Of a stretch of DNA of 64,000 nt, positions 45,661 through 64,000 are shown one piece after another. The DNA lies in sequence record PP601403.1; one strand, given 5' to 3'. Within the stretch, counting starts at the first letter, position 1; each line of letters begins with the position of its first letter. A model generated the notes under the pieces. It ran no database searches, was not told where the DNA came from, and saw only the letters and a list, made by a program, of their open reading frames with translations. Position numbers and translations under genes: made by a program.

Positions 45661-45694
45661 AACTCTACTTACTCCTAAGGGAGTAAGTAGAGTT
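45661..45694. terminator. Bidirectional terminator, near-identical to 57903..57935
   Basis: AACTCTACTTACTCC-TAAG-GGAGTAAGTAGAGTT. Confidence 0.9.
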
Positions 45695-45713
45695 TAAATT
45701 AATTAAATTTTAT

Positions 45714-47882
45714 TTATCTCGAAAAGTTATTATGTTCCACAAACTCAGTATAATTAGTTTTAGAATATGGTTTATCGCAATTTATGGTTAAATTATTATA
45801 AATCTCAGCTGTAGTAGAGTAGTCATAACTTATTCCGATATCAAAGTTAGATACCCTACAGCCAGAAACTCTATAGTTATTTGAAGATAACCCAGCACCA
45901 GCTGCTTTATCACCGTCTTTTTCTACTAAAGTGTCTATAAAAATAGAATCATTAGAGACTAACGCCCCATAAGTCCCACCTGTGGTTTTTAATCTTACCG
46001 ATTTTATTTTAACAACCCCAGAAGAAGTAGAACTTGAGGTAAGAATTGGAATCCCTGAACTTGTGATGTAACCGCCACTCATATCGAAAATTAAAGCATC
46101 GTGTGTGGATTTGAATAATCCTACAGCTGTACATGTTATTTCTGATCCACCATCAATAACAATAATCCCGGTAGCCGCCAAAGAAACAATACCGTTACCA
46201 GTATTAATAATTTTAAAATTATTAATACTTAGAGTTTCTATATTACCAGAAACAACCACCAACCCAGCACCAGTTCCAGTAAGACTGTAAACAGAAGTAT
46301 TGGTTATACTCCCCCACCTAGAATTTTCTACCTCTATACCTCCGTAGTTGATTACATCAGGGATATTGCCCTTTATTCTTATCTCTGTGTTACTTACTTT
46401 GAAAAAGTCGGACCCGCCATAGAACTTTATTGGTGCCGCGTTTCCTATTGTTTCTATTGAACTGTTCACAATCTTAGTGTTAGCAGCCGAAGATGTCACA
46501 CCGATCCCGGTGGCATTCTTAATTGTCACATCGTTTATAACTGTATTAACACCGTATGTTTCTAGTGACGCTAAACAATTAGTACCGTCAATTAATGAGT
46601 TAGAAACAGAACAATTGGGCGCCTGAACCTTAATACCACGTTTTTTAACACCACTAACTTTAACATTGTTAATGTTAAACTTACTTCTATTATCTATATT
46701 AGTGTATCCGCCATGAAATAGCTGAATACCATCACTATCTTCGGCCGGATCTATACCGCCAGAACTGACATTTTTAACTGTACCAGAAATACTTACGTTC
46801 GGAGTAGAAGCGGCGTCGTTAAAAGCCACTAAAATCCCTCTTGCGGTCCCACCACTATCTCCAATCGTCCCATTAGATTTTGCCATTATATCGGAAACAT
46901 GCGCATTGATGCTAGCAGTTATGTTTTGGTTTATAACAGAACTAGAAGATTTATATAAAGCCACACCGATACACTGTTCTGTATCGGTATTATTTTTAAT
47001 ATCTGTTACAACACAATCTATCATGACCTTATCACTAGAAACCACCAAACCTACATCAGTAAATAAACCGTATTGTAAGTTATCGCATTCTCTACCATCT
47101 AAATTAGTTATTATTTTGGCAGGTCTGTCACAGTAAATTGCTGCGTTTAGTTCGGTCTGCATATTTAATCCAGTTGGTTTAAATATACTTTTAGCAGCAA
47201 GAAGAGATCCCTTTAAGTTAAGCTGTTTATTATGGATATAAACAGATCCAGGTAACCCATTTATCTCTTTATTTGTACAATACGCGAATGCTGCGTTTAT
47301 TGCCAGGGATGATTCTTTACCACTTTTTGCACCGAAGTATTCTATAAACATTTTTTGGTTTGGGTATAAAACTGCGGTATTCCCATTCGAAGCATCTAGT
47401 ATACCATACCCATCGGGAACACCTCCCTTTACAACCTCAAATAAAGCACCAGCGCGATCTGATAAAAACAAAAAAGATCCAATGTTAAATAGACCGGATT
47501 TTATTTCCTCTACCGAACTGACACCGATATAAGAAGAATTTTTCTCCACTACTTTCCAGCCTTTTTTACCACCTGGGGTAGGAGAACTATTAGCTTGAAC
47601 TACATAAGGTAATTTACCATTCCAACTGTACCAGTATCCATCTGTTGGATAAAAGACACATTTATCCCGATCACCAATACCTAAAGTTCCGCCACTAACA
47701 AAATCAAAACCTGCTGGTTTAAACCCAACATCTTTCAAAGCTTGTTGTACAGTTTTATGTTGTTTACCGAAACGATCCTGCCACAAAGCAGCAGGAGAGT
47801 TCATCGCATAATCAAACGAAATGGCGTTATCTTGTAAGTCTTCTGTTGCTGAAGATCCAATAGGGTTTTGTGTGAAAATCAT
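45714..47882 (-). CDS. Tailspike 1, putative polysaccharide depolymerase
   Basis: Shared N-terminal anchor (DLQDNAISFDYAMNS..WQDRFG), one Tail_spike_N-like domain (GFDFVSGGTL), and a parallel beta-helix body (DSDGIQ, KRGIKVQ). Confidence 0.85.
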   Translation of the reverse strand: MIFTQNPIGSSATEDLQDNAISFDYAMNSPAALWQDRFGKQHKTVQQALKDVGFKPAGFDFVSGGTLGIGDRDKCVFYPTDGYWYSWNGKLPYVVQANSSPTPGGKKGWKVVEKNSSYIGVSSVEEIKSGLFNIGSFLFLSDRAGALFEVVKGGVPDGYGILDASNGNTAVLYPNQKMFIEYFGAKSGKESSLAINAAFAYCTNKEINGLPGSVYIHNKQLNLKGSLLAAKSIFKPTGLNMQTELNAAIYCDRPAKIITNLDGRECDNLQYGLFTDVGLVVSSDKVMIDCVVTDIKNNTDTEQCIGVALYKSSSSVINQNITASINAHVSDIMAKSNGTIGDSGGTARGILVAFNDAASTPNVSISGTVKNVSSGGIDPAEDSDGIQLFHGGYTNIDNRSKFNINNVKVSGVKKRGIKVQAPNCSVSNSLIDGTNCLASLETYGVNTVINDVTIKNATGIGVTSSAANTKIVNSSIETIGNAAPIKFYGGSDFFKVSNTEIRIKGNIPDVINYGGIEVENSRWGSITNTSVYSLTGTGAGLVVVSGNIETLSINNFKIINTGNGIVSLAATGIIVIDGGSEITCTAVGLFKSTHDALIFDMSGGYITSSGIPILTSSSTSSGVVKIKSVRLKTTGGTYGALVSNDSIFIDTLVEKDGDKAAGAGLSSNNYRVSGCRVSNFDIGISYDYSTTAEIYNNLTINCDKPYSKTNYTEFVEHNNFSR

Positions 47883-47942
47883 ATAAAACCTCTTTGATTA
47901 ATAGGTAGTTAAAGAAGTCATTTAAGCTTCTTTAAAATCAGT

Positions 47943-47953
47943 TCATAAGATCT
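47943..47953 (-). promoter_or_regulatory. Candidate late promoter AGATCTTATGA for tailspike 1
   Basis: Same 11-mer lies upstream of tailspike 2 (55467..55477); contains TATG. Confidence 0.6.
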
Positions 47954-47993
47954 GAGTTAATGATCGGCACGTTCTTACTCTATTTAATAAAAC

Positions 47994-48025
47994 ATCCCAC
48001 CTAACCAATCACGGTTAGGTGGGAT
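47994..48025. terminator. Stem-loop
   Basis: ATCCCACCTAACC-AATCAC-GGTTAGGTGGGAT in a divergent intergenic region. Confidence 0.6.
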
Positions 48026-48050
48026 AATCAGTATAATTAAAAATTTACTG

Positions 48051-48083
48051 TGTTCTATATTTTTTCAGATAGATATTATTAAG
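48051..48083 (+). promoter_or_regulatory. Early-type promoter
   Basis: 33-nt identity with 7580..7612. Confidence 0.75.
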
Positions 48084-48129
48084 ATGGTAAACCAAGTAAG
48101 TTATTTCAAAATAGTCTAGGAGAATGATT

Positions 48130-48501
48130 ATGCGTTTTAAACACGATAGTTTAATGAAAGTAAAGAAGGTTTTAATGACTCGTGTAAGTTACATCATTAA
48201 CTTACAAATCCGGAATGGTGAGAAAGCTGTTGATCTCGCTACCAAGTACAAAATCAACCCCAGTACTATTTCTGAACTGAAACTTCAGAAAGTTGATAAG
48301 ATGAGCTTAGATCGTCTTATTACTTGTGTTGATAAAATGGGATTAGAATACTCCATCGGGATTGCTAATTCCAATGGTTATAAAACAATAGACGTTTCTT
48401 TACCGAAGTATGACAATGATCCAGTTATTCGTCAGATTGATATGACGCGTCATCAAGACAAACATGAATCTAGCAAAAACGTAACTACTCGAGCGGTATA
48501 A
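48130..48501 (+). CDS. XRE-family helix-turn-helix protein (HTH_37-like)
   Basis: KAVDLATKYKINPSTISELKLQKVDKMSLDRLI; ATG 7 nt after AGGAG (ORF track start 48124). Confidence 0.75.
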   Translation: MRFKHDSLMKVKKVLMTRVSYIINLQIRNGEKAVDLATKYKINPSTISELKLQKVDKMSLDRLITCVDKMGLEYSIGIANSNGYKTIDVSLPKYDNDPVIRQIDMTRHQDKHESSKNVTTRAV

Positions 48502-48505
48502 AAAG

Positions 48506-48847
48506 ATGATCAAAGAAATTCTATCTAACAGCGAATGTGTAGAGAAACAACTCATTAAAACATTCCCTGAGTTTAATCAACAGTTTCCAGAAGAGTTGAA
48601 ACTAACTCTGATCAATATGATCAAACACGATGAAACGGTTACTGTATTCCCTAACACTGTGGAAGTTCAAAACAGTACTTTCAAACAACTTGTAATCAAG
48701 ATCTGTAAAGAGTGGCTAATCTTTATTACCGAAGAGTTGACTGAATACACTTGTTTCTATCGACAAGCTAATTTGGATAAACTTAAATCTTTTATTGCGC
48801 TACACAGTGAACAAACACTAGTAGGAGAATTATACGCTAAGTGTTAG
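48506..48847 (+). CDS. Hypothetical protein
   Basis: 113 aa, operon context. Confidence 0.6.
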   Translation: MIKEILSNSECVEKQLIKTFPEFNQQFPEELKLTLINMIKHDETVTVFPNTVEVQNSTFKQLVIKICKEWLIFITEELTEYTCFYRQANLDKLKSFIALHSEQTLVGELYAKC

Positions 48848-48860
48848 GAGATTTGTTAAA

Positions 48861-48962
48861 ATGAAATTAACAAAACGTTCCGGAACAGTTATTGTGATTA
48901 CAGTAGTGTTCTGGGTAATAACTGGTATAGTTGGATACCAACTCTACCATGCCGCAGTGTAA
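48861..48962 (+). CDS. 33-aa single-pass membrane peptide (missed by the ORF track)
   Basis: AGGAG 10 nt upstream; MKLTKRSGTVIVITVVFWVITGIVGYQLYHAAV. Confidence 0.6.
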   Translation: MKLTKRSGTVIVITVVFWVITGIVGYQLYHAAV

Positions 48963-48976
48963 AAGGAAACAGTGAA

Positions 48977-50314
48977 ATGACTAAGAAAAACAAAGAAGCT
49001 AAATCAACAGAAGTTCCCCCGGTAGAAACTACCGAAGTTGTAGTTGAAAAAATTAAAGATCAGTCAGAAGCTACTTTTGATTTCTCGGAACTGCTGAAAC
49101 CAGAAACACTCCCCTCTGTAGAATTGGAAAATGTTGAAGTTAAACCCAAGTACGTTCTCGATAATATTACTAACAAACCAAAGCTGAAAGTTGGTGATAA
49201 AGAAATTGAACTTAAAGAAGTTCAACTCACCACTGACTATTTCTTTAACATTACTGGATATCGTTATCGTCCAAGTCATTACCGGTTTAGTAACCACTAC
49301 AATGAAAATGAAATGAAGAAGGTTGAAGGTCACCCTAAATGGTACGGTGCTGAAGTTAACGGGATTCAATTCTTCCTGACCCAAGGTTCTGTTGTAGAAG
49401 TCAAGCGCCTTGATAACCAAACTAGTTATAACGGATCCAACACCGATAGTCGTAAACCTTGCGTTAAAGTAGCTTACTCAACCATCATTGCTGATAACCT
49501 TTCTGTCCGTGGATTTGAAGAGAATAGACTATTTAATGTAGGGTTGATTGGGGGCTTGATTTCCTTTGACAAGGTTTCTTTGTCAGATGGTAAGGTGGAT
49601 ATTGAAAACTCTATTGATCTTACAAATATGGATCTAAGTGTTTTCAGTATTACTCGCGCAAACTCTCTTAATGTTAATCGGTTTAACGGAAGTCGGGTTT
49701 CATTGGATGGGTTTAATTCGATCAACATTTACAACAGTAGTTGTTACTGTCATAACGATAGTTCGTTCATTCTTGAATTGTCAAATAAGAAGATGGTCGA
49801 CCTTTCTATTGGCAAAACCACTCTTAGTGATTTCAAGTTTGTTAACTTTAGTCATAATCTTTGCGAGGGGTTGGATGTTAACTCTAAAATCGTTATCGAT
49901 AAACGCATTGATTATGGTTATATCACTGGGCTAAAACCTGTTCCGTTTGTCCGAGTCGGTCGTAGTGGAATCCTGGTAGGCAATCAACACTTCACCGCTG
50001 TGGAGATGTTGGGTAAAATCAGTACTACTACTTTGCACGAAATTACACCTATCTCCCCGTGGTACCCAACCCCGACCTTTGGTTCTCCAAGGACACTAGA
50101 ACCGTTGGTTGGTCGCGATACTGCCGATAAAGCTTATAACGTAGCTTTTAACGCTGGCGGAAAGGGGAAAGTTCCTGATCATCAACCTGATCAAATCGTG
50201 GTGGATGTTGTTCAAACTACAATTGATCAAATTCGATCTAAGGTTAAAGTGTTTGCTTTGATCGACACTCTGAATCCTGGTGACTTTGAATATGCCGATG
50301 AATATCCGTACTGA
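48977..50314 (+). CDS. Hypothetical protein with a beta-solenoid-like central region
   Basis: 445 aa; acidic N-terminus; short beta-strand repeats in the middle. Confidence 0.7.
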   Translation: MTKKNKEAKSTEVPPVETTEVVVEKIKDQSEATFDFSELLKPETLPSVELENVEVKPKYVLDNITNKPKLKVGDKEIELKEVQLTTDYFFNITGYRYRPSHYRFSNHYNENEMKKVEGHPKWYGAEVNGIQFFLTQGSVVEVKRLDNQTSYNGSNTDSRKPCVKVAYSTIIADNLSVRGFEENRLFNVGLIGGLISFDKVSLSDGKVDIENSIDLTNMDLSVFSITRANSLNVNRFNGSRVSLDGFNSINIYNSSCYCHNDSSFILELSNKKMVDLSIGKTTLSDFKFVNFSHNLCEGLDVNSKIVIDKRIDYGYITGLKPVPFVRVGRSGILVGNQHFTAVEMLGKISTTTLHEITPISPWYPTPTFGSPRTLEPLVGRDTADKAYNVAFNAGGKGKVPDHQPDQIVVDVVQTTIDQIRSKVKVFALIDTLNPGDFEYADEYPY

Positions 50315-50999: not shown

Positions 51000-51004
51000 G
51001 TTAG

Positions 51005-55406: not shown

Positions 55407-55440
55407 AACTCTCTACTCCCAATTATGGGAGTAGAGAGTT
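55407..55440. terminator. Stem-loop terminator
   Basis: AACTCTCTACTCCCA-ATTA-TGGGAGTAGAGAGTT. Confidence 0.85.
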
Positions 55441-55466: not shown

Positions 55467-55477
55467 AGATCTTATGA
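55467..55477 (+). promoter_or_regulatory. Candidate late promoter AGATCTTATGA for tailspike 2
   Basis: Identical to the element upstream of tailspike 1. Confidence 0.6.
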
Positions 55478-55533: not shown

Positions 55534-57894
55534 ATGTCCAGTAACAAACCTTTCCCATCGCCAGATCTTGACGTATTTAAAGAAAACTCACTTATATTAG
55601 ACAACTTTGTCAACAGTCAAGATAATGAACATCCTGATCGTTTTAACAGAAAAAGACCAACTATCACAGGGATTATCAAAGAAGCTTTTAACGTCCGTAC
55701 TGACATTTCCAATATGAACGAAACTCTTATTGGTCAAAGTCGTTGGGACGCGGTTCCTAAGAATACCAGTTTGAGTTTAGGTGGTGATAACGGAGCTTTG
55801 AACAAACAAGCTCAAGCTTTGTTTAACCGAACTGAAATGTTGAAAGTTCACGCGCGAGAAGCACTTCGTAGAACTTATCAAGAAGTGGGTTTAAATCTGG
55901 TTGAAGGTTCTTTTGAGGAAGGCGGAACCTTAAACACTGTTACCGACATTCTACTTGAGGAGAAAACTGGTAAAGTTTATAGCTGGACTGGGAGTTTTCC
56001 GAAAGTTGTTAATAAAGGAACTTTACCAACTAGCGAAGCTGAATTTTTAGAACAAAATATTAAATCTCTTTATGGTGTGTTATCAAGAACTTTTGATAAC
56101 GACGGTATTGTTTTTAGCACTGTAGAGTTAGAAAATACTTCACTACCCATCGGAACAACAATAAGGGTTGATGGGAGGTATGGGGGGAGATTTAAAATTA
56201 TACCCAGAGGGTCGAAGGTCCCTGACGGGTACTTTTTACTATCGGCTGGGGGCAATAAACTCGCAGAGTTGCAATTTTCTAATATTCTTAAGCCAGAATG
56301 GTTTGGGGTTTTTTCCAACGCGCCAGGATCATTAGAATCTGAAACTGCTGATGGCTTAAATGCCATGTTTTCAGCATTAAAAAATAAAACCGGGTTGGTT
56401 TTTGAACTTAATGGTGTTTATTATGTTAATAAACAAATTACAGTTCCATTCTGCGAAACTACTTCTCCGCATATCCTAAGAATTTTTACTATTTCAGGCA
56501 AAAATTCTATAATAGCAAGCTCACACCAACAAAAAACACTAGTAATTAAAACTTCTTCAGATATCGGTCGGCGTAATTATGGATTTTCAATAGAGGATTT
56601 AACACTTAGAAATACCGTAGGTTGGGTAAAGGGTACTGGGCTTTATATCGAGGGGTCTTTTAGCCCTATATTTTCTAGGGTTTTTTGTCATAACTTTGAC
56701 AAATGTTTTGAAATTTACTGTTCATCCGAAGTAATATTTGATAAATGCGTCGCTACCACGTGCAACTATGGTGTGTATGGTGACCAGCTGGCTAATCCTA
56801 ATGGAGTTAATGGTAACGATTACTCTGTCATTACTTATAATCAGTTTGTTTGCTTCGGATTTGAAAAATGTGCCATTAGATCTAATGGTGGTGGTTCAGC
56901 CAAACATATTGGCGGGACTATGGCATCACCCGGGCTAGCAGCTAGGAGCTTTATACAATATCAAGGTTCTATAAGAGACGTTGTGATAGAAGACGTTCTC
57001 TTGGAATGTCAAAATGTCACATTGGATGGTTGTATATCATTCCTAGGGAATGGATTAAAACGTTCCATTAAAATATCTGGGGTGGTACAAGAGGTTATTT
57101 CTTCACCCAATAATGTTCTTATAAGGGCAGATGGTGTTGAAAATATTACTATAGAAAACATTCCATTTACGGTTCAAGGTGATATATTTGAACATATAAA
57201 ATATGTTCGCATTGACGGAGCCAAGGTTGTTTCCTTTATCAACAATGCTCGTTCTTATAGCTATTTGAATAAAGTAGACTTATATGATGTAGAAGAGGTT
57301 TTTGTCGATGGATACAATTTTATAGAAATTAACCCCCAATCTACGATAAGATACACAACTACGGGTGAACCGGTTGGAATATACACGCTTAATAGTTATC
57401 AGCCAGGTGAATTATTGGACCATACTGGGAAGGCTGGATTTAAATGTTCTACAGTGTATAATCGTTTACATTTTTCGGAATTAATGGCTTTTCTTGCATC
57501 TAAAAAACCAATGATTTCTTGTGCCAAAGTTTTAACTCTTAGTGACGCATTGGGCGTTAAATTGGTCAATGGTAATGTTAACAAGGGTCAGTATACCTTT
57601 GGCTGTATTCCTGGAAGATGGAAGACACAGTTTTTTGTATTCCCTACTTCTGGATTAACCGTCGTAGATAGCAGTGTGAATGGACCTGTATATTTTAATA
57701 TCGCAGGTTGTTCAGGAGTTTATATGTTAACGCAAGAAAATTTTTATAACCCGCAAATTGCGATCCCAGAGAGTGAATTAAATAACATCACCGGTTGGCC
57801 TATCTATAAAACATTGTACAATACAGATACTACGCCCAATACACCAATAGGTTGGGTTAGTACCTATGGTGGTAAAAAGGCTATTAAAATTTAA
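55534..57894 (+). CDS. Tailspike 2, putative depolymerase (786 aa from MSSNKPF)
   Basis: GAGGA RBS; anchor region, LGGDNGALNKQAQALFNRT module, Tail_spike_N-like domain (GSFEEGG), beta-helix body. Confidence 0.85.
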   Translation: MSSNKPFPSPDLDVFKENSLILDNFVNSQDNEHPDRFNRKRPTITGIIKEAFNVRTDISNMNETLIGQSRWDAVPKNTSLSLGGDNGALNKQAQALFNRTEMLKVHAREALRRTYQEVGLNLVEGSFEEGGTLNTVTDILLEEKTGKVYSWTGSFPKVVNKGTLPTSEAEFLEQNIKSLYGVLSRTFDNDGIVFSTVELENTSLPIGTTIRVDGRYGGRFKIIPRGSKVPDGYFLLSAGGNKLAELQFSNILKPEWFGVFSNAPGSLESETADGLNAMFSALKNKTGLVFELNGVYYVNKQITVPFCETTSPHILRIFTISGKNSIIASSHQQKTLVIKTSSDIGRRNYGFSIEDLTLRNTVGWVKGTGLYIEGSFSPIFSRVFCHNFDKCFEIYCSSEVIFDKCVATTCNYGVYGDQLANPNGVNGNDYSVITYNQFVCFGFEKCAIRSNGGGSAKHIGGTMASPGLAARSFIQYQGSIRDVVIEDVLLECQNVTLDGCISFLGNGLKRSIKISGVVQEVISSPNNVLIRADGVENITIENIPFTVQGDIFEHIKYVRIDGAKVVSFINNARSYSYLNKVDLYDVEEVFVDGYNFIEINPQSTIRYTTTGEPVGIYTLNSYQPGELLDHTGKAGFKCSTVYNRLHFSELMAFLASKKPMISCAKVLTLSDALGVKLVNGNVNKGQYTFGCIPGRWKTQFFVFPTSGLTVVDSSVNGPVYFNIAGCSGVYMLTQENFYNPQIAIPESELNNITGWPIYKTLYNTDTTPNTPIGWVSTYGGKKAIKI
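55856..55878 (+). repeat. 23-nt exact repeat in three tailspike genes (also 58348..58370 and 62121..62143)
   Basis: GAGAAGCACTTCGTAGAACTTAT, encoding (R)EALRRTY. Confidence 0.9.
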
Positions 57895-57902
57895 ATAATT
57901 TA

Positions 57903-57935
57903 AACTCTACTTACTCCTAAGGAGTAAGTAGAGTT
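57903..57935. terminator. Stem-loop terminator
   Basis: AACTCTACTTACTCCT-A-AGGAGTAAGTAGAGTT; differs by 1 nt from 45661..45694. Confidence 0.9.
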
Positions 57936-57955
57936 ATTTTATATTATTTATTTTA

Positions 57956-58001
57956 TTGATTTTATGTACTTTGTTATTAACAGAGAAGGTAAGAACTTAT
58001 G
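57956..58001 (+). promoter_or_regulatory. Late-promoter/leader shared with 61704..61750
   Basis: TTGATTTTATGTACTTT and TAACAGAGAAGGTAA blocks are identical in both copies. Confidence 0.75.
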
Positions 58002-60872
58002 AATTCCACTGGTAATGATTTAGAATCCAATGACATCTTGGATTTTGAAGATAACTGTGAAAACTTAGATGTTTTAATGAATGCTGATCAAGACTATTGG
58101 ACTGATCGTCTTGGTAATAAACGTCCTACAATTGATTACGCTTTGCGTATGGCTGGATTTACACCAGCTGGATTTGATTTCACCACAGGTGGTGTTTTAA
58201 AGAATGGTGACAGAAACAAGTGTGTATTTAACCAAGCTGATCAAACTTGGTATAGTTGGTCAGGAGATCTTCCTTATAATGTAATTGCTGGAAGTACACC
58301 TGGGGAAGGTTGGAAAGTTGTTAATAGGAATGCTTTAACTATAGCAAGAGAAGCACTTCGTAGAACTTATCAGGAAGTTGGTTTAAACCTAGTTGAAGGT
58401 TCTTTTGAACAAGGCGGAGTGGTTTCCAGCATTACAGATGTGCTCTTGCGCGAGCGTGATGGTAAGGCTTATGGCTACACTGGGATCTTTCCGTTCACTG
58501 TAACCGGATCACAAATAGCTCCAGATCCACGCCTGTGGAAAGATAAAAGTCCCGTTAAAATAACTTTTAAACAACCGCAATTAGGTAGTGTAGAACGTGG
58601 TCTTCAAGACAAGTTGACAGATAACAGAACTACCTTGGATTATGGTGCTGTCGGTGACGGAGTGAATAACGACACTTCCGCATTCGTCATCATGTCAGCA
58701 CTGGCCTCAAACGTTCCTATTGATGGGCTGGGTAAGATCTATGTTGTTACCGATATTCCTCAGTCGGGGATATTTTTCAATGGAATGTGGAAAGTAGGTT
58801 CCACTCTTACACCATTCGAATACGTTGGTGCTATCAGAGCTGGTAATAATGTCATTGCGATCGGACCTAATGCGGCACCAAACTGTATTTCTGACGACTT
58901 CATAGCTATTGGTAACGGAGCGGCGCAATCCGTAGTTAGTGCTAGAAACGGCATTGCTATTGGCAAAAACTCAATGATGAGTAATATTTGGGGTCGCCAT
59001 AATCTAGGGTTTGGACTAGAGGCGCTACGGTCGCTGGTTGGGTCTCCTACTGATCAGATAGTAGGGTCTCGCAACATTGGCATGGGTGGTAACGCCGGTC
59101 GTTTTCTCACCGGTTCTCGTAACTTAATCTTTGGGCGAGATGCTGGACATAACCTCACTGACGCTCACCTTAACCTTATCATGGGTGTAGGATCGGTGAT
59201 GGGTGATGGACCCAACACGCTCAATCCAGGAGTTATTGAAAACCAAACACCTTTAACACCATCCTATACAGTTATGTTGGGTGCAGAATCTGGAAAATTT
59301 TGGAATGCCGGTTATGGTGTTGGTGTAGGACATCAAGTTCTGATGAACGTTAAATCTGACACCGGAATGGTGGGAGTTGGTGCTAACGCGTTCAGTCTAC
59401 ATCAATCAGACATGAGTCACTGGGGTACGACACAGCAATTAGTGAATCTTACCGGCACTTATGCTCAAAGTGCCGGTACATTAATAACTGTCACAATAAC
59501 TGGTCATGGGTTAGTTTCTGGATATCGGGCATTATTACGGTTCACCACTGGTCCAAATGGTGATGTCACCTTTAACGACGATAACTGGTTCGTGGTTACA
59601 GTTGTCGACGCCAACACCTTTACTATTTTATCTCCAGTGAGTTCTGTCGCCACCGGAAATGTTTCAGTTTCTAAGATAGCGACTACTATTCCGTATAGCG
59701 CATTAACTGGTGGCTGCGTGGGTGTAGGACGTGAGGTCGGTAACGGTGTTTCAAATTACAGATCAACAGGGATGGGTGATCGCGTCGGTAGTAAGGGTTT
59801 AGGAGTAGAAACATCTGGGTTCGGATATAACGTTTTCTTAAACTACGTCCCTGGTGCTGGTTCTAGTTCGTTTGGAGCTTATTCACAACAGAGTAACAAC
59901 AATGCTAGTGGGAACACTAGTTTTGGTGTTTTGACCATGGCTGGTAATGTCATTACTGGCGTTAGTAACTCCGCATTTGGACCTCAAGCACTAAGATACG
60001 TGTCAACAGGCGGGAACAACGCGGCTTTCGGTGGGAACGCTTTACGTGGACTAACTACTGGCAACTATAACTCTGCCTTTGGACCGGATTCCTTAAGGTT
60101 TGGTGTCGGTGGAATACTGGACCACAACTTCAATAACTGCGGTGGGTTCGGGTATCAAGCCTACGTGTCAGGGGATAACCAAATTCAGTTGGGCAATTCA
60201 GCCACCACTACCTATGTGTTTGGTACTGTCCAAAACCGTTGTGATGCTCGCGATAAGACCGATGTGCGTGATACTGAGCTCGGGATCGATTTTATCATGG
60301 GGTTGCGTCCAGTTGACTACCGACTGGATATGCGTGACGACTACGTTAAACAATATCCAGATCGACCAGAGTGTCCTGTTGAACCAACACCTCCGATAAA
60401 ACCAGAACCTGGACCGGTGGTTGAGACTACGGGAATAAATGATAGCAGTTCACAACCTGATGATTATAATGTTAAACTCCAGATGTACGAGAGCGAGTAT
60501 GTTGTATACGAAAATCTTTTATCTAAATATAAGACAGATTTGGCACAACACGAAAAATGTCTTGTTGAGTGGGAAATAGAGTGTAAGAAAATCAAAGCGT
60601 TCAACGAGCACGTATTTACTGGTGAAGGAAAGGACGGTAGTAAAGTTAGGACTCGTTTCCACCATGGGTTTATTGCGCAAGAAGTAAAGGCCCTTTCTGA
60701 TAAGTTAGGTTTAGACTTTGGCGGTTATCAAGATCACACTATTAATGGCGGCGCTGACGTTAGAACGCTTGGTTATGATGAATTCATCCCCTGTACAGTA
60801 AAAGCCATACAGACGTGTTGGAATCGTCTTGACGAACTAGAACAACGTATAGCTTCATTAGAAGAGAAATAA
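57999..60872 (+). CDS. Tail fibre/tailspike 3 with YadA-like head repeats and a C-terminal peptidase S74 intramolecular chaperone
   Basis: Anchor plus two Tail_spike_N-like domains, DYGAVGDG, IAIGxNA repeats, and CDARDK...LRPVDY...HHGFIAQEV...KAIQ. Confidence 0.9.
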   Translation: MNSTGNDLESNDILDFEDNCENLDVLMNADQDYWTDRLGNKRPTIDYALRMAGFTPAGFDFTTGGVLKNGDRNKCVFNQADQTWYSWSGDLPYNVIAGSTPGEGWKVVNRNALTIAREALRRTYQEVGLNLVEGSFEQGGVVSSITDVLLRERDGKAYGYTGIFPFTVTGSQIAPDPRLWKDKSPVKITFKQPQLGSVERGLQDKLTDNRTTLDYGAVGDGVNNDTSAFVIMSALASNVPIDGLGKIYVVTDIPQSGIFFNGMWKVGSTLTPFEYVGAIRAGNNVIAIGPNAAPNCISDDFIAIGNGAAQSVVSARNGIAIGKNSMMSNIWGRHNLGFGLEALRSLVGSPTDQIVGSRNIGMGGNAGRFLTGSRNLIFGRDAGHNLTDAHLNLIMGVGSVMGDGPNTLNPGVIENQTPLTPSYTVMLGAESGKFWNAGYGVGVGHQVLMNVKSDTGMVGVGANAFSLHQSDMSHWGTTQQLVNLTGTYAQSAGTLITVTITGHGLVSGYRALLRFTTGPNGDVTFNDDNWFVVTVVDANTFTILSPVSSVATGNVSVSKIATTIPYSALTGGCVGVGREVGNGVSNYRSTGMGDRVGSKGLGVETSGFGYNVFLNYVPGAGSSSFGAYSQQSNNNASGNTSFGVLTMAGNVITGVSNSAFGPQALRYVSTGGNNAAFGGNALRGLTTGNYNSAFGPDSLRFGVGGILDHNFNNCGGFGYQAYVSGDNQIQLGNSATTTYVFGTVQNRCDARDKTDVRDTELGIDFIMGLRPVDYRLDMRDDYVKQYPDRPECPVEPTPPIKPEPGPVVETTGINDSSSQPDDYNVKLQMYESEYVVYENLLSKYKTDLAQHEKCLVEWEIECKKIKAFNEHVFTGEGKDGSKVRTRFHHGFIAQEVKALSDKLGLDFGGYQDHTINGGADVRTLGYDEFIPCTVKAIQTCWNRLDELEQRIASLEEK

Positions 60873-60877
60873 TATTG

Positions 60878-60906
60878 CTAAGTACCTCTCCAAGAGAGGT
60901 ACTTAG
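60878..60906. terminator. Bidirectional stem-loop terminator
   Basis: CTAAGTACCTCTC-CAA-GAGAGGTACTTAG. Confidence 0.85.
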
Positions 60907-60907
60907 T

Positions 60908-61177
60908 TTATTTTTGATTGGGGTTTTTCATAGTCCCTATTAACGTATTGGAAACCTTAAGGAATCCCGGTAGCTGATCTTTACCAACAACACAGTTATT
61001 CTTCCAATTGAGATTAAATCCACCACATTGTAACCGTTCATGCTCTGGAATATCTGTAGCTTGTTGATCGTGATTTTCTCCACATACCTGCTGTGTTATT
61101 TCTGTCACTGGTGTATATTCATCCTTTCGAAGAAAGATTTGTTTAAACGAGGTTATAACACTCTGGATGATGTTCAT
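60908..61177 (-). CDS. Hypothetical protein
   Basis: 89 aa with a strong AAGGAG RBS on the minus strand. Confidence 0.65.
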   Translation of the reverse strand: MNIIQSVITSFKQIFLRKDEYTPVTEITQQVCGENHDQQATDIPEHERLQCGGFNLNWKNNCVVGKDQLPGFLKVSNTLIGTMKNPNQK

Positions 61178-61253
61178 GGTTTCTCCTTGTCACTAATAAC
61201 GCACTACACATCATGCATTGAAAAGTACCGAATAAATATAATGGTGACCTTTA

Positions 61254-61655
61254 ATGACTTTACAAGATTTCCTTTCTCACTATCAATACCAACCTGATCC
61301 TGTTAAGAAAGACATTTGGATTATTCCTAATAAAGTTAACAATCAATATCTTGACGATTGTGATGGTTTCTGTTTAGGAATACTTTACTATGTACTTGCT
61401 AATAGTTCACTTCTTACTTTCTGGTATTTGTTACTATTTACAGATACAAGAATTTATTACGTAATTACTAGTAAAAACATTGGTCATGTGGTATTGAGAT
61501 ATAAAGGTCTTTATATTGACACTTATTCAAAAGCTTGGGTGACTAAAGAACAGATGTTAGATTATGGACATAAGTTCCATTGGTCTAGAATGTTCTTTTT
61601 CTGGCAAGTTGCTTTGAAAATGTTAATTAGTAAGATCTTAGTTAAAATTAAATAG
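61254..61655 (+). CDS. Transglutaminase-like cysteine peptidase-fold protein
   Basis: DDCDGFC, GHVVL and YIDT give a Cys-His-Asp order. Confidence 0.6.
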   Translation: MTLQDFLSHYQYQPDPVKKDIWIIPNKVNNQYLDDCDGFCLGILYYVLANSSLLTFWYLLLFTDTRIYYVITSKNIGHVVLRYKGLYIDTYSKAWVTKEQMLDYGHKFHWSRMFFFWQVALKMLISKILVKIK

Positions 61656-61664
61656 TAATAACTT

Positions 61665-61694
61665 CTCTACTTCTCCAATTAAGGAGAAGTAGAG
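61665..61694. terminator. Stem-loop terminator
   Basis: CTCTACTTCTCC-AATTAA-GGAGAAGTAGAG. Confidence 0.8.
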
Positions 61695-61703
61695 GATCTT
61701 TAA

Positions 61704-61750
61704 TTGATTTTATGTACTTTAGTCAATAACAGAGAAGGTAAAGAATTATG
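61704..61750 (+). promoter_or_regulatory. Late-promoter/leader shared with 57956..58001
   Basis: Same two conserved blocks; TATG 34 nt before the start. Confidence 0.75.
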
Positions 61751-64000
61751 AGTTTTAATACAGGTAATGAACTTCCAAGTTTAGATGAGCGTGACCTATA
61801 CGACAATGCTCTTAATCTTGACAAAGCTATGAACAGTACCGATCCAACTTGGACAGACAGATTTGGAGTTGAGAAACCAACTATCGACACCGCTTTGAAA
61901 TCAACAGGGTTCATGCCAGCTGGGTTTGACTTTGTAACTGGCGGAACTCTCCAACCAGGTGATCGTAATAAAGCTGTTTATAATCCAGCACCTAACGGTG
62001 ATAATAATTGGTATCGTTGGAATGGTGCATTTCCGAAGGAAATTGCTGCTAACAGTCAACCTAATCCTAAAGATGAAAATAATTGGGTTCCTGTTTTAAT
62101 TAAAACAAGCTCAGTTGAAAGAGAAGCACTTCGTAGAACTTATTTAGAAGCTGGGTATAATCTTGTTCCTGGTAGTTTTGAGCAAGGAGCTGTTATAACT
62201 TCAGCTACTGACGTAGTACTTCATGAGAAAACAGGGAAGTGTTATTCTGGACCTATTGGTAATGTTTCCGCTGGGACCAACCCGACTGTCGGTGGGCAAT
62301 TTGTAGATGTTTCGCGTGTAACTAGCGTATCTGGAGGATTTAGATATGTAAGGACTCCAAAACCATTCGGGTCAGGGTTTTTATTGACCGATGTAAACCA
62401 AGTTGTGCTCCACTCTGATGGGATGTGGTATTACTATACTGGAACTTTGCCGCACGCTAATACCGAGCCTGAACCAATCTTTGAAGACGGGTGGAGGAAT
62501 GCTGGCCTTCTTGTTGGCGATAAGTATAACAGCCCATTAAACTACGGGGCCAAAGGAGATGGTGTCACCGGAGATGCCGTGGCAATCGGTTTGGCAATTA
62601 AGAACAATAATGACGTAGACATGACCTCACTACGATGGAGGATTGAAGACACTATCATCGTTGGGTCACGAAAAAATATCCGTGTAGACGGAAGTGTTCT
62701 TATATTAGACTGCGCCGGAAAAGTAGCTTTTAAAACAGAGGAGGGATCTCAGCTTATCTCCTTTACTGGAAGATCGTCACTGGTGTTGGGGGAGGCATTG
62801 GCGTTTATTCAACTAAGCGGCAAGACTGACTCGCCTACTGTGTTTGAAGACTACACACGTCTTGTTAACCTGATAGGTCTTACTCTTTCATCTCAGGATA
62901 TTGAATACTCGCTCATTTTCGATAAGTGCGTAAACGGGGTAACTATTGACGGGTGTCGTTTCACGACACGTAACGCAATCCTGTCTAATGGGAAATCAGT
63001 AGAGATCCACTGCTCTAACTCAATCTTCTTTGGGTGGAGCGTTGCTGGGTCAGTCGGCATAAAGATTACCTCATCCGGCAATGGCAACTCTTTCTCAGAG
63101 GGGTGGCATTTTGTAAACTGCTCAATGGATGCGTTTGAGACTACTATTAAAGTTCGCGATATCTTTGTCCTGACTATAGCTAATAGCTGGCTCACCTCCA
63201 AGAGAGGGGGTAAGGTGCTTGAATTCGACCGACCGGCCACCCTTAGCAACGCATCTATCGTAATAGGCGGTTGCGCTATTCTTGGGGAGATCTTCTTTAA
63301 CGACTCTCCTGGCGGGTACAACTACGATGCCAAGATTAACTCATGCACATTTACTGCCTTTGGTCGTATTACCATCGGTAGGGAGTGTGCAGGGATCGAT
63401 ATAGATGATGTGAGTTTCAAAAACGGAAGCGGGTACGCGATTCGGTTTCCTACAACATTTTCTACTACAGCTATCTCCATCACAAAATCAAGAGTGGATG
63501 GTACTTATACCGGTATAGTGGAGAACTTTTCAAACTATTCAGGCGGTGTATGTGTTAAAGATTGTAAAGGTAAAGTTTCATCTACCTTGGCAATGAAGGA
63601 GGATTCCGCATACTCCATGTTGTCATCTCAGTGGACACCTAGATTCGCTGTTTCGGCAAGTAGTATGGCAGGAGTTTCGGTATCAACTAATGAGTTCTTG
63701 TTTTCAACAGTTCCTGATTTCCCCTCTGGTGCCCACGGGATTATTAAAGGGCAGATAAGGACAACCAGTGCAACAGTTAACGGGCTGGCTTTCAAGGTTT
63801 ACTTAGATGGCTCAGAGATGATATCAGGTACAGGGTGGTCTACAAGGGAGGTGTACGCAGCCAATGGGTTGGCTATTATTGATATACCTATCTTCATTCC
63901 AGAGTCATATCAAGGCGTTAAATTACTGTCCGTCCAGTACGTGGGTGCAGGTAGCATAACTACCGCGCAAGGCTCTTATATACGGTTGGAGAAGTCATAA
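61748..64000 (+). CDS. Tailspike 4, putative depolymerase
   Basis: Anchor plus three Tail_spike_N-like domains, NYGAKGDG pectate-lyase-like start and a beta-helix; the stop codon falls at the window end. Confidence 0.85.
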   Translation: MSFNTGNELPSLDERDLYDNALNLDKAMNSTDPTWTDRFGVEKPTIDTALKSTGFMPAGFDFVTGGTLQPGDRNKAVYNPAPNGDNNWYRWNGAFPKEIAANSQPNPKDENNWVPVLIKTSSVEREALRRTYLEAGYNLVPGSFEQGAVITSATDVVLHEKTGKCYSGPIGNVSAGTNPTVGGQFVDVSRVTSVSGGFRYVRTPKPFGSGFLLTDVNQVVLHSDGMWYYYTGTLPHANTEPEPIFEDGWRNAGLLVGDKYNSPLNYGAKGDGVTGDAVAIGLAIKNNNDVDMTSLRWRIEDTIIVGSRKNIRVDGSVLILDCAGKVAFKTEEGSQLISFTGRSSLVLGEALAFIQLSGKTDSPTVFEDYTRLVNLIGLTLSSQDIEYSLIFDKCVNGVTIDGCRFTTRNAILSNGKSVEIHCSNSIFFGWSVAGSVGIKITSSGNGNSFSEGWHFVNCSMDAFETTIKVRDIFVLTIANSWLTSKRGGKVLEFDRPATLSNASIVIGGCAILGEIFFNDSPGGYNYDAKINSCTFTAFGRITIGRECAGIDIDDVSFKNGSGYAIRFPTTFSTTAISITKSRVDGTYTGIVENFSNYSGGVCVKDCKGKVSSTLAMKEDSAYSMLSSQWTPRFAVSASSMAGVSVSTNEFLFSTVPDFPSGAHGIIKGQIRTTSATVNGLAFKVYLDGSEMISGTGWSTREVYAANGLAIIDIPIFIPESYQGVKLLSVQYVGAGSITTAQGSYIRLEKS

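What the first reader, a model, noticed from the sequence alone, without database searches (positions are those of the whole stretch)
45661..64000. Tailspikes are organised as self-contained promoter-gene-hairpin cassettes in two regulatory lineages
Seen: TSP1 (minus strand) and TSP2 share the upstream AGATCTTATGA about 60 nt before the start and nearly identical downstream hairpins (45661 vs 57903, 1-nt difference). TSP3 and TSP4 share a 46-47-nt leader with 17- and 15-nt exact blocks. All four share an N-terminal anchor while their catalytic bodies are unrelated. Inference: a cassette-based system for acquiring, duplicating and exchanging receptor-binding modules, giving multi-serotype host range as described for capsule-targeting jumbo phages.
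Basis: partly seen in the sequence, partly recalled or inferred. Interest (0 to 1): 0.7.

Follow-up and report, generated by a model that had tools for sequence, protein, structure and literature searches.

The report
Swappable tailspike bodies on fixed anchors
A giant Aeromonas phage carries four tailspike genes, each with its own late promoter and terminator; relatives keep the promoter and the N-terminal anchor but swap the receptor-binding body, a familiar way for phages to change host specificity.

Summary
The window is the last 64 kb of Aeromonas phage ACP1 (PP601403.1), a phiKZ-like Ferozepurvirus.

**Observation: confirmed.** The shared 11-mer, the near-identical hairpins, the 17- and 15-nt leader blocks, the shared N-termini and the unrelated bodies are all real.

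**Interpretation: partly right.**
- Each tailspike is its own promoter-gene-hairpin transcription unit, and tailspike content varies strongly among relatives.
- Both "lineages" carry one promoter core, ATNNTATG. It is strongly avoided genome-wide and sits upstream of about 20 genes, including the major capsid gene. It contains the phiKZ late-promoter TATG.
- The hairpins belong to 63 intergenic hairpins genome-wide.
- The exchanged unit is not the whole cassette. Homology to relatives breaks inside each gene after the N-terminal anchor (aa 108-190). It resumes at the stop codon, the terminator or the next conserved gene.
- Bodies come from unrelated small phages. The TSP4 body is 88% DNA-identical to a podophage tailspike. 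The TSP2-type anchor carries 18 unrelated bodies in public data.
- The identical hairpin is part of an ~83-nt terminator-promoter block copied next to several tailspike genes, resembling PeSL elements of T4-type phages.

**Verdict:** new member of a known kind (modular receptor-binding proteins), moderate interest.

The parts
45714..47882 (-). TSP1 gene, 722 aa. Anchor is aa 1-109 (47556-47882); body is 45714-47555.
   Evidence: Annotated ACP1_0221. Tail_spike_N hit at 18.9 bits and a tail-spike PHROG hit. Homology to PS1, PS2 and pAEv1810 stops at 47556. The body is 58-64% identical in protein to P0004, on a 49-kb podophage-like contig.
45641..45712 (-). Partial copy of the hairpin-A block after TSP1; the hairpin itself is 45661-45694. 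It lies between the convergent RNase H gene and TSP1.
   Evidence: 15-bp perfect stem, -23.4 kcal/mol, z -7.3. Terminator-like, with a T-rich tail on the minus strand. 93% identical to the block upstream of ACP1_0083. Present here only in ACP1 and AVP1.
47943..47953 (-). Late-promoter-like motif of TSP1 (ATCTTATG at 47951-47944). Inferred transcription start at G 47944.
   Evidence: ATNNTATG is conserved in all five phages; the 11-mer core differs at one base in PS1.
55407..55440 (+). Terminator-type hairpin ending the upstream gene block, just before the TSP2 promoter.
   Evidence: 15-bp stem, -26.1 kcal/mol, z -6.2. A related hairpin lies at 33300-33325 (family D7).
55467..55477 (+). Late-promoter-like motif of TSP2 (ATCTTATG at 55469-55476). 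Inferred transcription start at G 55476.
   Evidence: Conserved in all five phages and in contigs L018 and L019.
55534..57894 (+). TSP2 gene, 786 aa. Anchor plus joint is about aa 1-170; the joint-coding repeat is 55856-55980. The body follows.
   Evidence: Annotated ACP1_0236. Tail_spike_N at 26 bits. Homology to PS1/PS2 ends at 55928 and to pAEv1810 at 56018. The TSP2-type anchor carries 18 unrelated bodies in public data.
57884..57966 (+). Hairpin-A block: AT-rich lead-in, hairpin 57903-57935, T-rich spacer and the TSP3 late-promoter motif 57959-57966.
   Evidence: 95% identical over 83 nt to the block upstream of ACP1_0083. Present at this junction in all five phages and in contigs L017 and L018. 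pAEv1810 has one compensatory stem change.
57999..60872 (+). TSP3 gene, 957 aa. First anchor domain is aa 1-108 (57999-58322); the joint-coding repeat is 58348-58472. The body runs to the stop and includes a C-terminal chaperone domain.
   Evidence: phrog_4636 tail spike E 2.7e-131. Pfam Tail_spike_N and Peptidase_S74 above cut-off; End_N_terminal just below its cut-off at 25.9 against 26.3 bits. Homology to AVP1, PS1 and PS2 ends at 58318-58322. Body GC is 0.45. 743 homologous proteins carry several anchor types.
60878..60906 (+). Hairpin after TSP3. It belongs to the ACP1-specific segment that came with the TSP3 body.
   Evidence: 13-bp stem, -21.8 kcal/mol, z -4.9. Absent in AVP1, PS1 and PS2, where the TSP3 stop overlaps the next ORF's start.
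60908..61177 (-). 89-aa ORF of unknown function, inside the ACP1-specific segment.
   Evidence: Annotated ACP1_0238. No Pfam or PHROG hit. No match in the relatives: homology resumes at 61252.
61254..61655 (+). Conserved 133-aa ORF between TSP3 and TSP4. It marks the 3' limit of the variable TSP3 segment.
   Evidence: Present in all five phages and in contig L018. No family hit.
61665..61694 (+). Terminator-type hairpin after the 133-aa ORF, just before the TSP4 promoter.
   Evidence: 12-14-bp stem, -22.5 kcal/mol, z -5.2. Conserved in AVP1, PS1, pAEv1810 and L018.
61704..61741 (+). TSP4 late-promoter motif (61707-61714; inferred start at G 61714) and 5'UTR with the 17-nt and 15-nt blocks shared with TSP3.
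   Evidence: The 15-nt block occurs at TSP3 only in ACP1 and AVP1.
61748..64000 (+). TSP4 gene, 750 aa. Anchor plus joint is aa 1-172 (61748-62263); the joint-coding repeat is 62121-62245. The body is 62264-64000. Its terminator lies outside the window, at the start of the record.
   Evidence: Tail_spike_N at 42 bits. Body GC is 0.45. 62264-64000 is 87.8% DNA-identical to a tailspike on a 42-kb SU10-like podophage contig, and the homology ends at the stop codon. The 3' flank is L007:1-495.
5225..5232 (+). Reference copy of the same ATNNTATG motif, 80 nt upstream of the major capsid gene (5313-7484).
   Evidence: PF25620 PhiKZ_MCP, E 2.4e-180.
47994..48081 (+). Neighbour, not part of the TSP1 unit: hairpin 47994-48025 plus a 29-nt early-promoter-like motif from 48053, serving the divergent HTH gene.
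   Evidence: (family D2). HTH_37 hit.

Best explanation
The region holds four tailspike genes of a phiKZ-like (nucleus-forming) Aeromonas phage. A fifth, ACP1_0083, lies elsewhere in the genome.

Each gene is its own late transcription unit. It has a late promoter of the phage's non-virion RNA polymerase type (core ATNNTATG, start inferred at the final G). A 33-60-nt 5'UTR follows, then the ORF, then a strong stem-loop with a T-rich tail.

The promoter, the 5'UTR and the first 108-190 codons are resident scaffold. Those codons encode an anchor domain plus a conserved joint, which reads REALRRTYQEVGLNLVEGSFEQGG in TSP3. The rest of each gene, the receptor-binding body, is replaced by recombination:
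- The 5' crossover falls at or next to the joint-coding DNA. That DNA is repeated in the paralogues, and its protein motif is shared with tailspikes of unrelated Aeromonas phages.
- The 3' crossover falls at the stop codon, in the terminator region or at the next conserved gene.
- Incoming bodies often bring their own terminator and scraps of the donor's neighbouring DNA.

An ~83-nt terminator-plus-promoter block (hairpin A) is resident at the TSP2/TSP3 junction. It has been copied next to other tailspike genes. This records exchange between tailspike loci and supplies 3' homology.

Shown: the anatomy, the breakpoints, the donor relatives and the motif statistics. Inferred: promoter and terminator function, the recombination route, and the effect on host range.
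For: **Identity.** 100% match to ACP1. PhiKZ-type capsid protein. Tubulin and phiKZ-like inner-head annotations. The genus is placed in Chimalliviridae by PMC12837969.

**Promoter.**
- All four leaders share GATYTTATG. The ATNNTATG core is kept at all four loci in five phages.
- ATNNTATG is uniquely depleted in the genome: 33 seen against 123 expected, ratio 0.27. The 26 control patterns give 0.77-1.47.
- It is 17- to 24-fold enriched in sense orientation upstream of genes, including the major capsid gene.
- The phiKZ late promoter is TATG with the start at G (PMC4666361, PMC12809450).
- Sigma-70-like sites are not enriched (45 against 55.9 expected) and none lies in the leaders.

**Terminators.** Folding energies are -22 to -29 kcal/mol, z -4.9 to -7.3. 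Terminator-like sites number 32 against 11.9 expected. The genome has 63 intergenic hairpins.

**Breakpoints inside the ORFs.**
- TSP1: aa 109.
- TSP2: aa 131-161.
- TSP3: aa 107-140.
- TSP4: aa 119-189.
- Homology resumes at 45658, at 57883-57900 and at 61252.

**Diversity.** There are 14 distinct bodies over four positions in five phages. There are 18 unrelated bodies on TSP2-type anchors in a 1.84-billion-protein library.

**Donors.**
- TSP4 body: 87.8% DNA identity to an SU10-like podophage contig, ending at the stop codon.
- TSP1 body: 58-64% protein identity on a podophage-like contig whose terminator matches the flank hairpin after ACP1 TSP4.
- TSP3 body: a family of 743 proteins with P22-type, T7-type and Tail_spike_N anchors.
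- Bodies of TSP3 and TSP4 have GC 0.45, against 0.37 for the genome.
- The TSP4 3' flank holds an antisense relic of a small-phage gene, 87% identical over 53 aa. It also matches DNA downstream of tailspike-sized genes (annotated as tailspike only in phiA005) in phiA005 and phiA047.

**Joint.** The motif is present in most tailspikes here and in phiA005, phiA047 and the metagenomic podophage protein P0004.

**Hairpin-A block.** Copies are 93-95% identical. The copy after AVP1 TSP4 carries a truncated TSP3 promoter.
Against: - No transcript data exist. The promoter assignment rests on analogy with phiKZ and on sequence statistics.
- How phiKZ-type polymerases terminate at such hairpins was not tested here.
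- About 13 of the 33 ATNNTATG copies are not in an obvious promoter position.
- No body was found at two different loci among the five genomes. Exchange between loci is therefore inferred only from duplicated flanks.
- TSP1 and TSP2 bodies have the phage's own GC (0.365), so their foreign origin is old or absent. The closest TSP1 relative is only 58-64% identical.
- The enzymatic nature of the TSP1, TSP2 and TSP4 bodies is not established. There are no family or PDB hits beyond the N-terminus, and the TSP2 model was unusable.
- Only five genomes and three contigs were compared.
Confidence: 0.75

Rival explanations
1. One reading: whole promoter-gene-hairpin cassettes are the mobile units. They fall into two regulatory lineages (TSP1/TSP2 and TSP3/TSP4) and are duplicated and exchanged as blocks.
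For: - TSP1 and TSP2 share the 11-mer, a long 5'UTR and hairpin A. TSP3 and TSP4 share a leader.
- The hairpin-A block, which holds a terminator and a promoter, is copied next to tailspike genes.
- The flank after AVP1 TSP4 is a copy of the TSP2/TSP3 intergenic region.
Against: - In every comparison the promoter, the 5'UTR and the anchor stay while the body changes.
- The promoter core is common to all four genes and to about 16 others.
- Beyond that core, the TSP1 and TSP2 leaders are not similar.
- The TSP3/TSP4 15-nt block is present at TSP3 only in ACP1 and AVP1. It looks like a lineage-specific conversion, not an old lineage.
- By N-terminal sequence the groups are {TSP1, TSP3, TSP4} and {TSP2, ACP1_0083}, which cuts across the proposed lineages.
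Confidence: 0.1
2. The shared promoter and hairpin sequences reflect only functional constraint: the same polymerase and the same termination signal. They play no part in recombination, and body replacement happens by illegitimate recombination at random, filtered by selection for intact proteins.
For: - The motif and the hairpins are genome-wide classes.
- The TSP4 body joins the donor-like sequence exactly at the stop codon, with no shared flank.
- Breakpoints after the anchor are scattered over about 80 codons.
Against: - The hairpin-A block copies are 93-95% identical over 74-83 nt, spacers included. The other 60 intergenic hairpins all differ from it.
- The copy after AVP1 TSP4 keeps a truncated promoter that serves no gene.
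- The same foreign flank recurs after TSP1, TSP2 and TSP4 in different phages.
- The joint motif is 55-70% identical in protein to tailspikes of unrelated Aeromonas phages.
Confidence: 0.12
3. The leaders are host sigma-70 promoters (for example TTGATT read as a -35 box), and the tailspikes are transcribed by the host polymerase.
For: The TTGATT hexamer lies upstream of TSP3 and TSP4.
Against: - The scan finds no sigma-70-like site in any of the four leaders, and fewer sites than in shuffles overall (45 against 55.9).
- phiKZ development is independent of the host polymerase (PMC4666361).
- The conserved bases are ATNNTATG, not a -35/-10 pair.
Confidence: 0.03

Closest known systems
Modular receptor-binding proteins: a conserved N-terminal anchor with a horizontally exchanged C-terminal body. 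Described for Klebsiella and E. coli phages, including multi-tailspike Kuttervirus and jumbo phages (PMC6872550, PMC8262889, PMC10408124).
   Same: - The anchor is conserved within the genus and per locus, and the body is replaced. Bodies are shared with phages of other morphotypes.
- Conserved DNA on both sides of the body is a candidate recombination site, as PMC10408124 proposes.
- Several tailspikes sit on one virion.
   Different: - The host is Aeromonas and the carrier is a nucleus-forming Chimalliviridae phage.
- The tailspike genes are split over three genome places, one of them inverted.
- The 3' homology is a terminator-promoter block.
- The physical arrangement of the spikes (branched or not) is unknown.
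PeSLs, the composite promoter/terminator motifs that mediate modular shuffling in T4-type phages (PMC2839356, PMC4122927).
   Same: A repeated intergenic element of about 80-100 bp combines a stem-loop terminator and a promoter. It flanks variable genes and is found at the edges of replaced segments.
   Different: - PeSLs carry sigma-70-like early promoters and flank orphan genes in hyperplastic regions. In PeSLs both crossovers are intergenic, and mini-circles were shown.
- Here the promoter is a late TATG type and the genes are tailspikes. Only the 3' crossover can use the block, because the 5' crossover is inside the ORF.
- No circular intermediates were looked for.
phiKZ late promoters read by the non-virion RNA polymerase (PMC4666361, PMC12809450).
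   Same: A TATG lies upstream of late structural genes, including the major capsid gene. There are no -35/-10 elements.
   Different: In ACP1 the conserved and genome-avoided pattern is longer: AT two bases upstream of TATG. For phiKZ only the four bases are reported, and the extra determinants are described as unknown.

Membership tests
Tailspike with Tail_spike_N (PF18668) N-terminal domain | Match to the Pfam model above its gathering score | tested here: met
   TSP2 26.0, TSP3 35.0 and TSP4 42.3 bits, against a cut-off of 25. TSP1 scores 18.9, below the cut-off, but is homologous to its paralogues (blastp E 1e-27 to 1e-29). ACP1_0083 scores 27.7.
Tailspike with enzymatic beta-helix body | A right-handed beta-helix or another known depolymerase fold in the C-terminal body | tested here: inconclusive
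   - TSP3: tail-spike PHROG E 2.7e-131 plus the Peptidase_S74 chaperone.
- TSP1: 29% identical to P0007, which carries Pfam Beta_helix.
- TSP4: 34% identical over about 224 aa to E. coli phage tailspikes.
- TSP2: no hit, and the AF2 model has pLDDT 45.
- No PDB sequence match for any body.
Modular RBP system (conserved anchor, exchanged body) | Anchors cluster by phage lineage and locus while bodies do not | tested here: met
   Orthologous N-termini are 58-99% identical. Bodies are unrelated except in the ACP1-AVP1 pair and the PS1-PS2 pair. There are 18 bodies on TSP2-type anchors.
Modular RBP system (conserved anchor, exchanged body) | Bodies shared with phages outside the genus | tested here: met
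   - TSP4 body: 86-90% protein and 87.8% DNA identity to an SU10-like podophage contig.
- TSP3 body: up to 70% identity, on proteins with P22-type and T7-type anchors.
- TSP1 body: 58-64%.
Branched multi-tailspike complex (Kuttervirus CBA120 type) | Tailspikes attach to one another through extra N-terminal domains | not testable with these tools
   Only a hint. The N-termini form two groups: {TSP1, TSP3, TSP4}, and {TSP2, ACP1_0083} with a different, longer N-terminal part before the joint. A virion structure is needed.
PeSL (T4-type promoter-early stem-loop) | Composite repeated element with a stem-loop terminator next to a promoter | tested here: met
   The hairpin-A block, 57884-57966, with copies 93-95% identical. 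The 29-nt early-type motif also follows hairpins.
PeSL (T4-type promoter-early stem-loop) | Sigma-70-like early promoter; flanks orphan genes in hyperplastic regions | tested here: not met
   The block's promoter is the ATNNTATG type, with no sigma-70-like site, and it flanks tailspike genes. It works like a PeSL but is not one.
PeSL (T4-type promoter-early stem-loop) | Recombination between copies that yields mini-circles | not testable with these tools
   This needs reads or DNA from infected cells.
phiKZ-type late promoter | TATG at the transcription start of late genes | tested here: met
   The sequence is present upstream of the capsid gene and of all tailspikes, conserved in relatives and avoided elsewhere in the genome.
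phiKZ-type late promoter | Initiation at the G by the phage's non-virion polymerase, late in infection | not testable with these tools
   No transcript data are available for ACP1.
Intrinsic (factor-independent) terminator | Stable stem-loop followed by a T-rich tract on the transcribed strand | tested here: met
   Whether the phage polymerases terminate there is not testable here.

The most novel reading that the evidence does not exclude
In this nucleus-forming jumbo phage, the joint-coding DNA on the 5' side and the ~83-nt hairpin-A terminator/late-promoter block on the 3' side act together as a dedicated two-sided landing site. It captures receptor-binding bodies from small phages that replicate outside the phage nucleus and moves them between the phage's own tailspike loci.

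Alongside this, the longer ATNNTATG signal, avoided everywhere else in the genome, would be the missing specificity determinant of Chimalliviridae late promoters.
Probability: 0.25. Interest if true: 0.6.

Novelty: new member of a known kind. Interest (0 to 1): 0.4.

Why it matters
- **Where host specificity is written.** The result shows where specificity sits in a family of Aeromonas jumbo phages that are being isolated for aquaculture use. It also shows which parts of the tailspike genes are fixed and which are variable.
- **Exchange across the phage nucleus.** A nucleus-forming phage has exchanged tailspike bodies, with flanking DNA, with small unrelated phages. This bears on how isolated such phages really are genetically.
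- **Late-promoter specificity.** For phiKZ, TATG is reported as necessary but not sufficient for late transcription, and the extra determinants are described as unknown. ACP1 shows a longer pattern, ATNNTATG, that is strongly avoided outside promoter positions. This gives a testable lead on that question.

Tried and rejected
- **IMG/VR scan** with the TSP3 anchor: no relatives found.
- **PDB sequence searches**: only the N-terminal domains matched (9occ gp13, 8x8m, 9d80). No body matched, and TSP3 had no hit at all.
- **AlphaFold2 of TSP2** with a 4-sequence alignment: mean pLDDT 45, pTM 0.40. I did not send it to a fold search because matches would be meaningless.
- **Small stem-loops in the long 5'UTRs of TSP1 and TSP2**: not more stable than shuffles (z -1.6 and -0.05), so I dropped them as a feature.
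- **Sigma-70 promoter reading**: rejected.
- **Pfam and PHROG** on the 133-aa and 89-aa ORFs, and Pfam on the ORFs over the flank relics: nothing.
- **ACP1_0082**, upstream of the fifth tailspike, as a possible tailspike remnant: no similarity.
- **Same body at two different loci** among the five genomes: none found.
- **Not run**: the genome contigs and metagenome-contig scans. The protein searches had already identified donor-type relatives.

Full report
**What the window is.** Positions 45000-64000 match the end of GenBank record PP601403.1, Aeromonas phage ACP1, at 100% identity (236,165 bp, host A. caviae, genus Ferozepurvirus). Window coordinate = record coordinate minus 172,165. The window encodes a PhiKZ-type major capsid protein at 5313-7484 (PF25620, E 2.4e-180). 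The record annotates a tubulin and a phiKZ-like internal head protein. PMC12837969 places the genus in Chimalliviridae, the nucleus-forming phiKZ-like phages. The window ends exactly at the stop codon of the fourth tailspike, which is also the end of the record. That gene's 3' flank is therefore at the start of the record (L007).

- The four genes are TSP1 45714-47882 (-), TSP2 55534-57894, TSP3 57999-60872 and TSP4 61748-64000.
- The 11-mer lies 60 and 56 nt before the TSP1 and TSP2 start codons.
- The two hairpins have identical 15-bp stems and fold at about -23 kcal/mol, z about -7.
- The TSP3 and TSP4 leaders share exact 17- and 15-nt blocks.
- All four proteins share an N-terminal region and hit Tail_spike_N, TSP1 below the cut-off. 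The bodies show no similarity to each other.

**One promoter type, not two lineages.**
- All four leaders contain GAT(C/T)TTATG. The ATNNTATG core is kept at all four loci in ACP1, AVP1, PS1, PS2 and pAEv1810, while the surrounding leader varies.
- Genome-wide, ATNNTATG occurs 33 times on both strands where about 123 are expected, a ratio of 0.27. The other 15 XYNNTATG patterns give 0.84-1.47 and 11 permutations of the last four bases give 0.77-1.14.
- In my own ORF map the motif is 17- to 24-fold enriched in sense orientation in upstream intergenic DNA. Checked against the annotation, about 19-20 of the 33 copies lie within about 110 nt upstream of a start codon. These include the capsid gene (window 5225-5232), all four tailspikes and a fifth tailspike-like gene, ACP1_0083.
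- phiKZ late promoters are defined by TATG with the start at the G and are read by the non-virion polymerase. The further determinants are reported as unknown (PMC4666361, PMC12809450).
- I therefore read the shared 11-mer and the 17-mer as two versions of the phage's general late promoter. This is an inference from sequence and analogy.
- Sigma-70-like sites are not enriched, and none lies in the leaders.
- The sub-types are not tied to loci. TSP3 of PS1, PS2 and pAEv1810 reads TATGACC like TSP2, and a metagenomic TSP2 (L017) has the TSP3-type core.
- The 15-nt TSP3/TSP4 block is at TSP3 only in ACP1 and AVP1, so it looks like a recent conversion of the 5'UTR.
- By protein, the N-termini group as {TSP1, TSP3, TSP4} and {TSP2, ACP1_0083}.

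**Hairpins are a genome-wide class.**
- The genome has 69 hairpins with perfect stems of at least 11 bp, 63 of them intergenic. The window has 23 with stems of at least 10 bp.
- In 45000-64000 there are 32 terminator-like sites against 11.9 expected.
- Every tailspike gene is bracketed by such hairpins, so each is plausibly monocistronic (inferred).

**What actually varies among relatives.**
- All five phages keep the four positions. The bodies differ: 4 versions at TSP1, 3 at TSP2, 3 at TSP3 and 4 at TSP4.
- In PS1 and PS2, TSP3 is an anchor-only ORF with the body missing (one truncation each). In pAEv1810, TSP4 is annotated as two consecutive ORFs (one break).
- DNA homology to ACP1 runs through the promoter, the 5'UTR and the first part of each ORF. 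It stops at aa 109 in TSP1, aa 131-161 in TSP2, aa 107-140 in TSP3 and aa 119-189 in TSP4. It resumes at 45658 (the end of the RNase H gene), at 57883-57900 (just before hairpin A) and at 61252 (the start of the conserved 133-aa ORF).
- The unit that is replaced is therefore the body plus what follows it, not promoter-to-hairpin.
- ACP1 and AVP1 share TSP1 and TSP2 (96-99% protein identity) and differ in TSP3 and TSP4.

**The joint.**
- Just after the first anchor domain most tailspikes have a stretch that reads REALRRTYQEVGLNLVEGSFEQGG in TSP3 (from aa 118). It is found in 13 of the 21 Ferozepurvirus tailspike ORFs checked and in ACP1_0083.
- It is also found in tailspikes of the unrelated Aeromonas phages phiA005 and phiA047 and in the metagenomic podophage protein P0004. 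Identity there is 55-70% over about 70-140 aa.
- Its coding DNA is the 125-nt direct repeat at 55856, 58348 and 62121.
- Breakpoints fall either just before it (about aa 108) or after it (about aa 150-190).

**Where the bodies come from.**
- TSP4: window 62264-64000 is 87.8% identical in DNA to a tailspike on a 42-kb contig with SU10-type portal, capsid and adaptor genes. The homology ends at the stop codon.
- TSP3: its body has 743 relatives, up to 70% identical, carried on Tail_spike_N, P22 head-binding and T7 tail-fibre N-termini, some in enterobacterial genomes. Its C-terminus is 37-47% identical to a tailspike-sized protein (annotated hypothetical) of the small Aeromonas phage 62AhydR11PP.
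- TSP1: its body is 58-64% identical to a protein on a 49-kb podophage-like contig.
- TSP2: its body has only two distant relatives. Its anchor type (57-96% identical) is attached to 18 mutually unrelated bodies in a library of 1.84 billion representatives, with the junctions mostly at aa 163-204 and a few anchors extending to about aa 260-300.
- GC content: the TSP3 and TSP4 bodies have GC 0.45 against 0.37 for the genome. The TSP1 and TSP2 bodies have 0.365.

**Flanks travel with bodies.** There are two families of 3' flank.
- *Family A* is the hairpin-A block. It has an AT-rich lead-in, the 15-bp hairpin, a T-rich spacer and the late promoter (57884-57966). It sits at the TSP2/TSP3 junction in all five phages and in two metagenomic contigs, with one compensatory stem change in pAEv1810. 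Further copies, 93-95% identical, lie in these places:
  - after TSP1 in ACP1 and AVP1 only;
  - upstream of ACP1_0083;
  - after AVP1 TSP4, with a truncated promoter that serves no gene;
  - after AVP1_0062.
- *Family B* is GC-richer and begins with a different hairpin. It follows ACP1 TSP4 (L007:1-495), TSP4 of PS1 and PS2, TSP1 of PS1, PS2 and pAEv1810, and in part TSP2 of PS1 and PS2.
  - It holds an antisense relic of a gene of phage 62AhydR11PP, 87% identical over 53 aa.
  - It matches DNA downstream of tailspike-sized genes in phiA005 and phiA047 (annotated as tailspike only in phiA005).
  - Its hairpin also ends the tailspike gene of the podophage-like contig L016.
- The ACP1 TSP3 body brought its own hairpin (60878-60906) and an 89-aa antisense ORF (60908-61177). 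Both are absent from the relatives.
- These duplicated flanks are the evidence for import from small phages and for exchange between the phage's own loci.

**How it most likely works.**
- Shown: separate units with a shared promoter-like core and strong hairpins; fixed promoter, 5'UTR and anchor; variable bodies with donor-type relatives in unrelated phages; repeated DNA on both sides of the variable part.
- Inferred:
  - late transcription from ATNNTATG by the phage's non-virion polymerase;
  - termination at the hairpins;
  - homologous or short-homology recombination, with the 5' crossover near the joint and the 3' crossover at the stop codon, in the hairpin-A or foreign flank, or at the next conserved gene;
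  - a change of receptor specificity as the selective benefit.
- Weak distributional hints. PS1 and PS2 share a host strain and the TSP2 and TSP4 bodies. ACP1 (A. caviae) and AVP1 (A. veronii) differ in TSP3 and TSP4.

**Comparison with what is known.**
- The pattern matches the modular receptor-binding-protein model: conserved anchor, exchangeable body, conserved motifs around the body as recombination sites (PMC6872550, PMC8262889, PMC10408124).
- The hairpin-A block works like a PeSL of T4-type phages (PMC2839356, PMC4122927). It fails the PeSL definition on promoter type and gene context.
- The promoter matches the phiKZ late type in its TATG and appears to be longer.
- My verdict is a new member of a known kind.
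- Two side results lift the interest a little. The first is the genome-wide avoidance of ATNNTATG. The second is clear import of tailspike DNA from small phages into a nucleus-forming phage.

**Dead ends.** These are listed under Tried and rejected.

Noticed in passing
Whole ACP1 genome; window copies at 4380-4387, 5225-5232, 36822-36829, 47951-47944 (-), 55469-55476, 57959-57966 and 61707-61714: ATNNTATG is uniquely avoided in the genome: 33 seen against 123 expected, while 26 control patterns are near 1.0. Most of the surviving copies sit just upstream of genes. For phiKZ only TATG is reported, and the extra promoter determinants are described as unknown.
   Followed up: partly
Window 7582, 36890, 48053 and 51043 (motif starts); 23 copies in the genome: A 29-nt, highly conserved bipartite AT-rich motif occurs 23 times, always on the + strand. 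In the four window copies and several others it follows a hairpin (not in all 23), and it lies 40-80 nt before a gene. It is probably the early promoter class of the phage.
   Followed up: partly
Outside the window: PP601403.1 81512-84019 (L009:23512-26019): A fifth tailspike-like gene, ACP1_0083 (835 aa). It has the TSP2-type N-terminus, a Tail_spike_N hit and a near-cut-off Beta_helix hit (25.0 against 25.9 bits). A 95%-identical copy of the hairpin-A block lies directly upstream, and a related hairpin lies downstream.
   Followed up: partly
Window 61254-61655: A 133-aa ORF with no family hit lies between TSP3 and TSP4 in all five phages and in contig L018. In AVP1, PS1 and PS2 its start overlaps the TSP3 stop. 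It may be a tailspike-associated factor.
   Followed up: no
L007:167-325 (record start, 3' flank of TSP4); also L003, L004 and L005 flanks: An antisense relic of a gene of the small Aeromonas phage 62AhydR11PP (87% identical over 53 aa). It is carried in the flank after several tailspike bodies at different loci.
   Followed up: yes
L002:15917-16933; L003:5248-6732 and 22632-23678; L004:4421-5932; L017:3738-4772: HNH endonuclease genes lie right next to tailspike loci in AVP1, PS2, PS1 and a metagenomic contig, but not in ACP1. In AVP1 one replaces the phosphohydrolase gene upstream of TSP2. Homing-type endonucleases could promote co-conversion of neighbouring DNA.
   Followed up: no
Genome-wide, for example window 2670, 7525, 22937, 38107, 45661, 55407 and 57903: 13 of the 63 intergenic hairpins start with AACTC or AACTT and end with the complement. 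Many more have a pyrimidine-rich CTCTAC-type 5' arm. This suggests either spread by copying or a sequence-specific reader.
   Followed up: partly
L003:21728-22120, L004:20045-20440, L005:23056-25094, L017 after 3545: Damaged tailspike positions in relatives. TSP3 of PS1 and PS2 is anchor-only (one truncation each). TSP4 of pAEv1810 is annotated as two ORFs (one break). TSP3 of contig L017 is interrupted (one insertion).
   Followed up: no
L017:1095-3545: One of the bodies on a TSP2-type anchor carries a GDSL/SGNH lipase-esterase domain (precomputed Pfam hit). This hints at a deacetylase-type rather than a lyase- or hydrolase-type tailspike.
   Followed up: no
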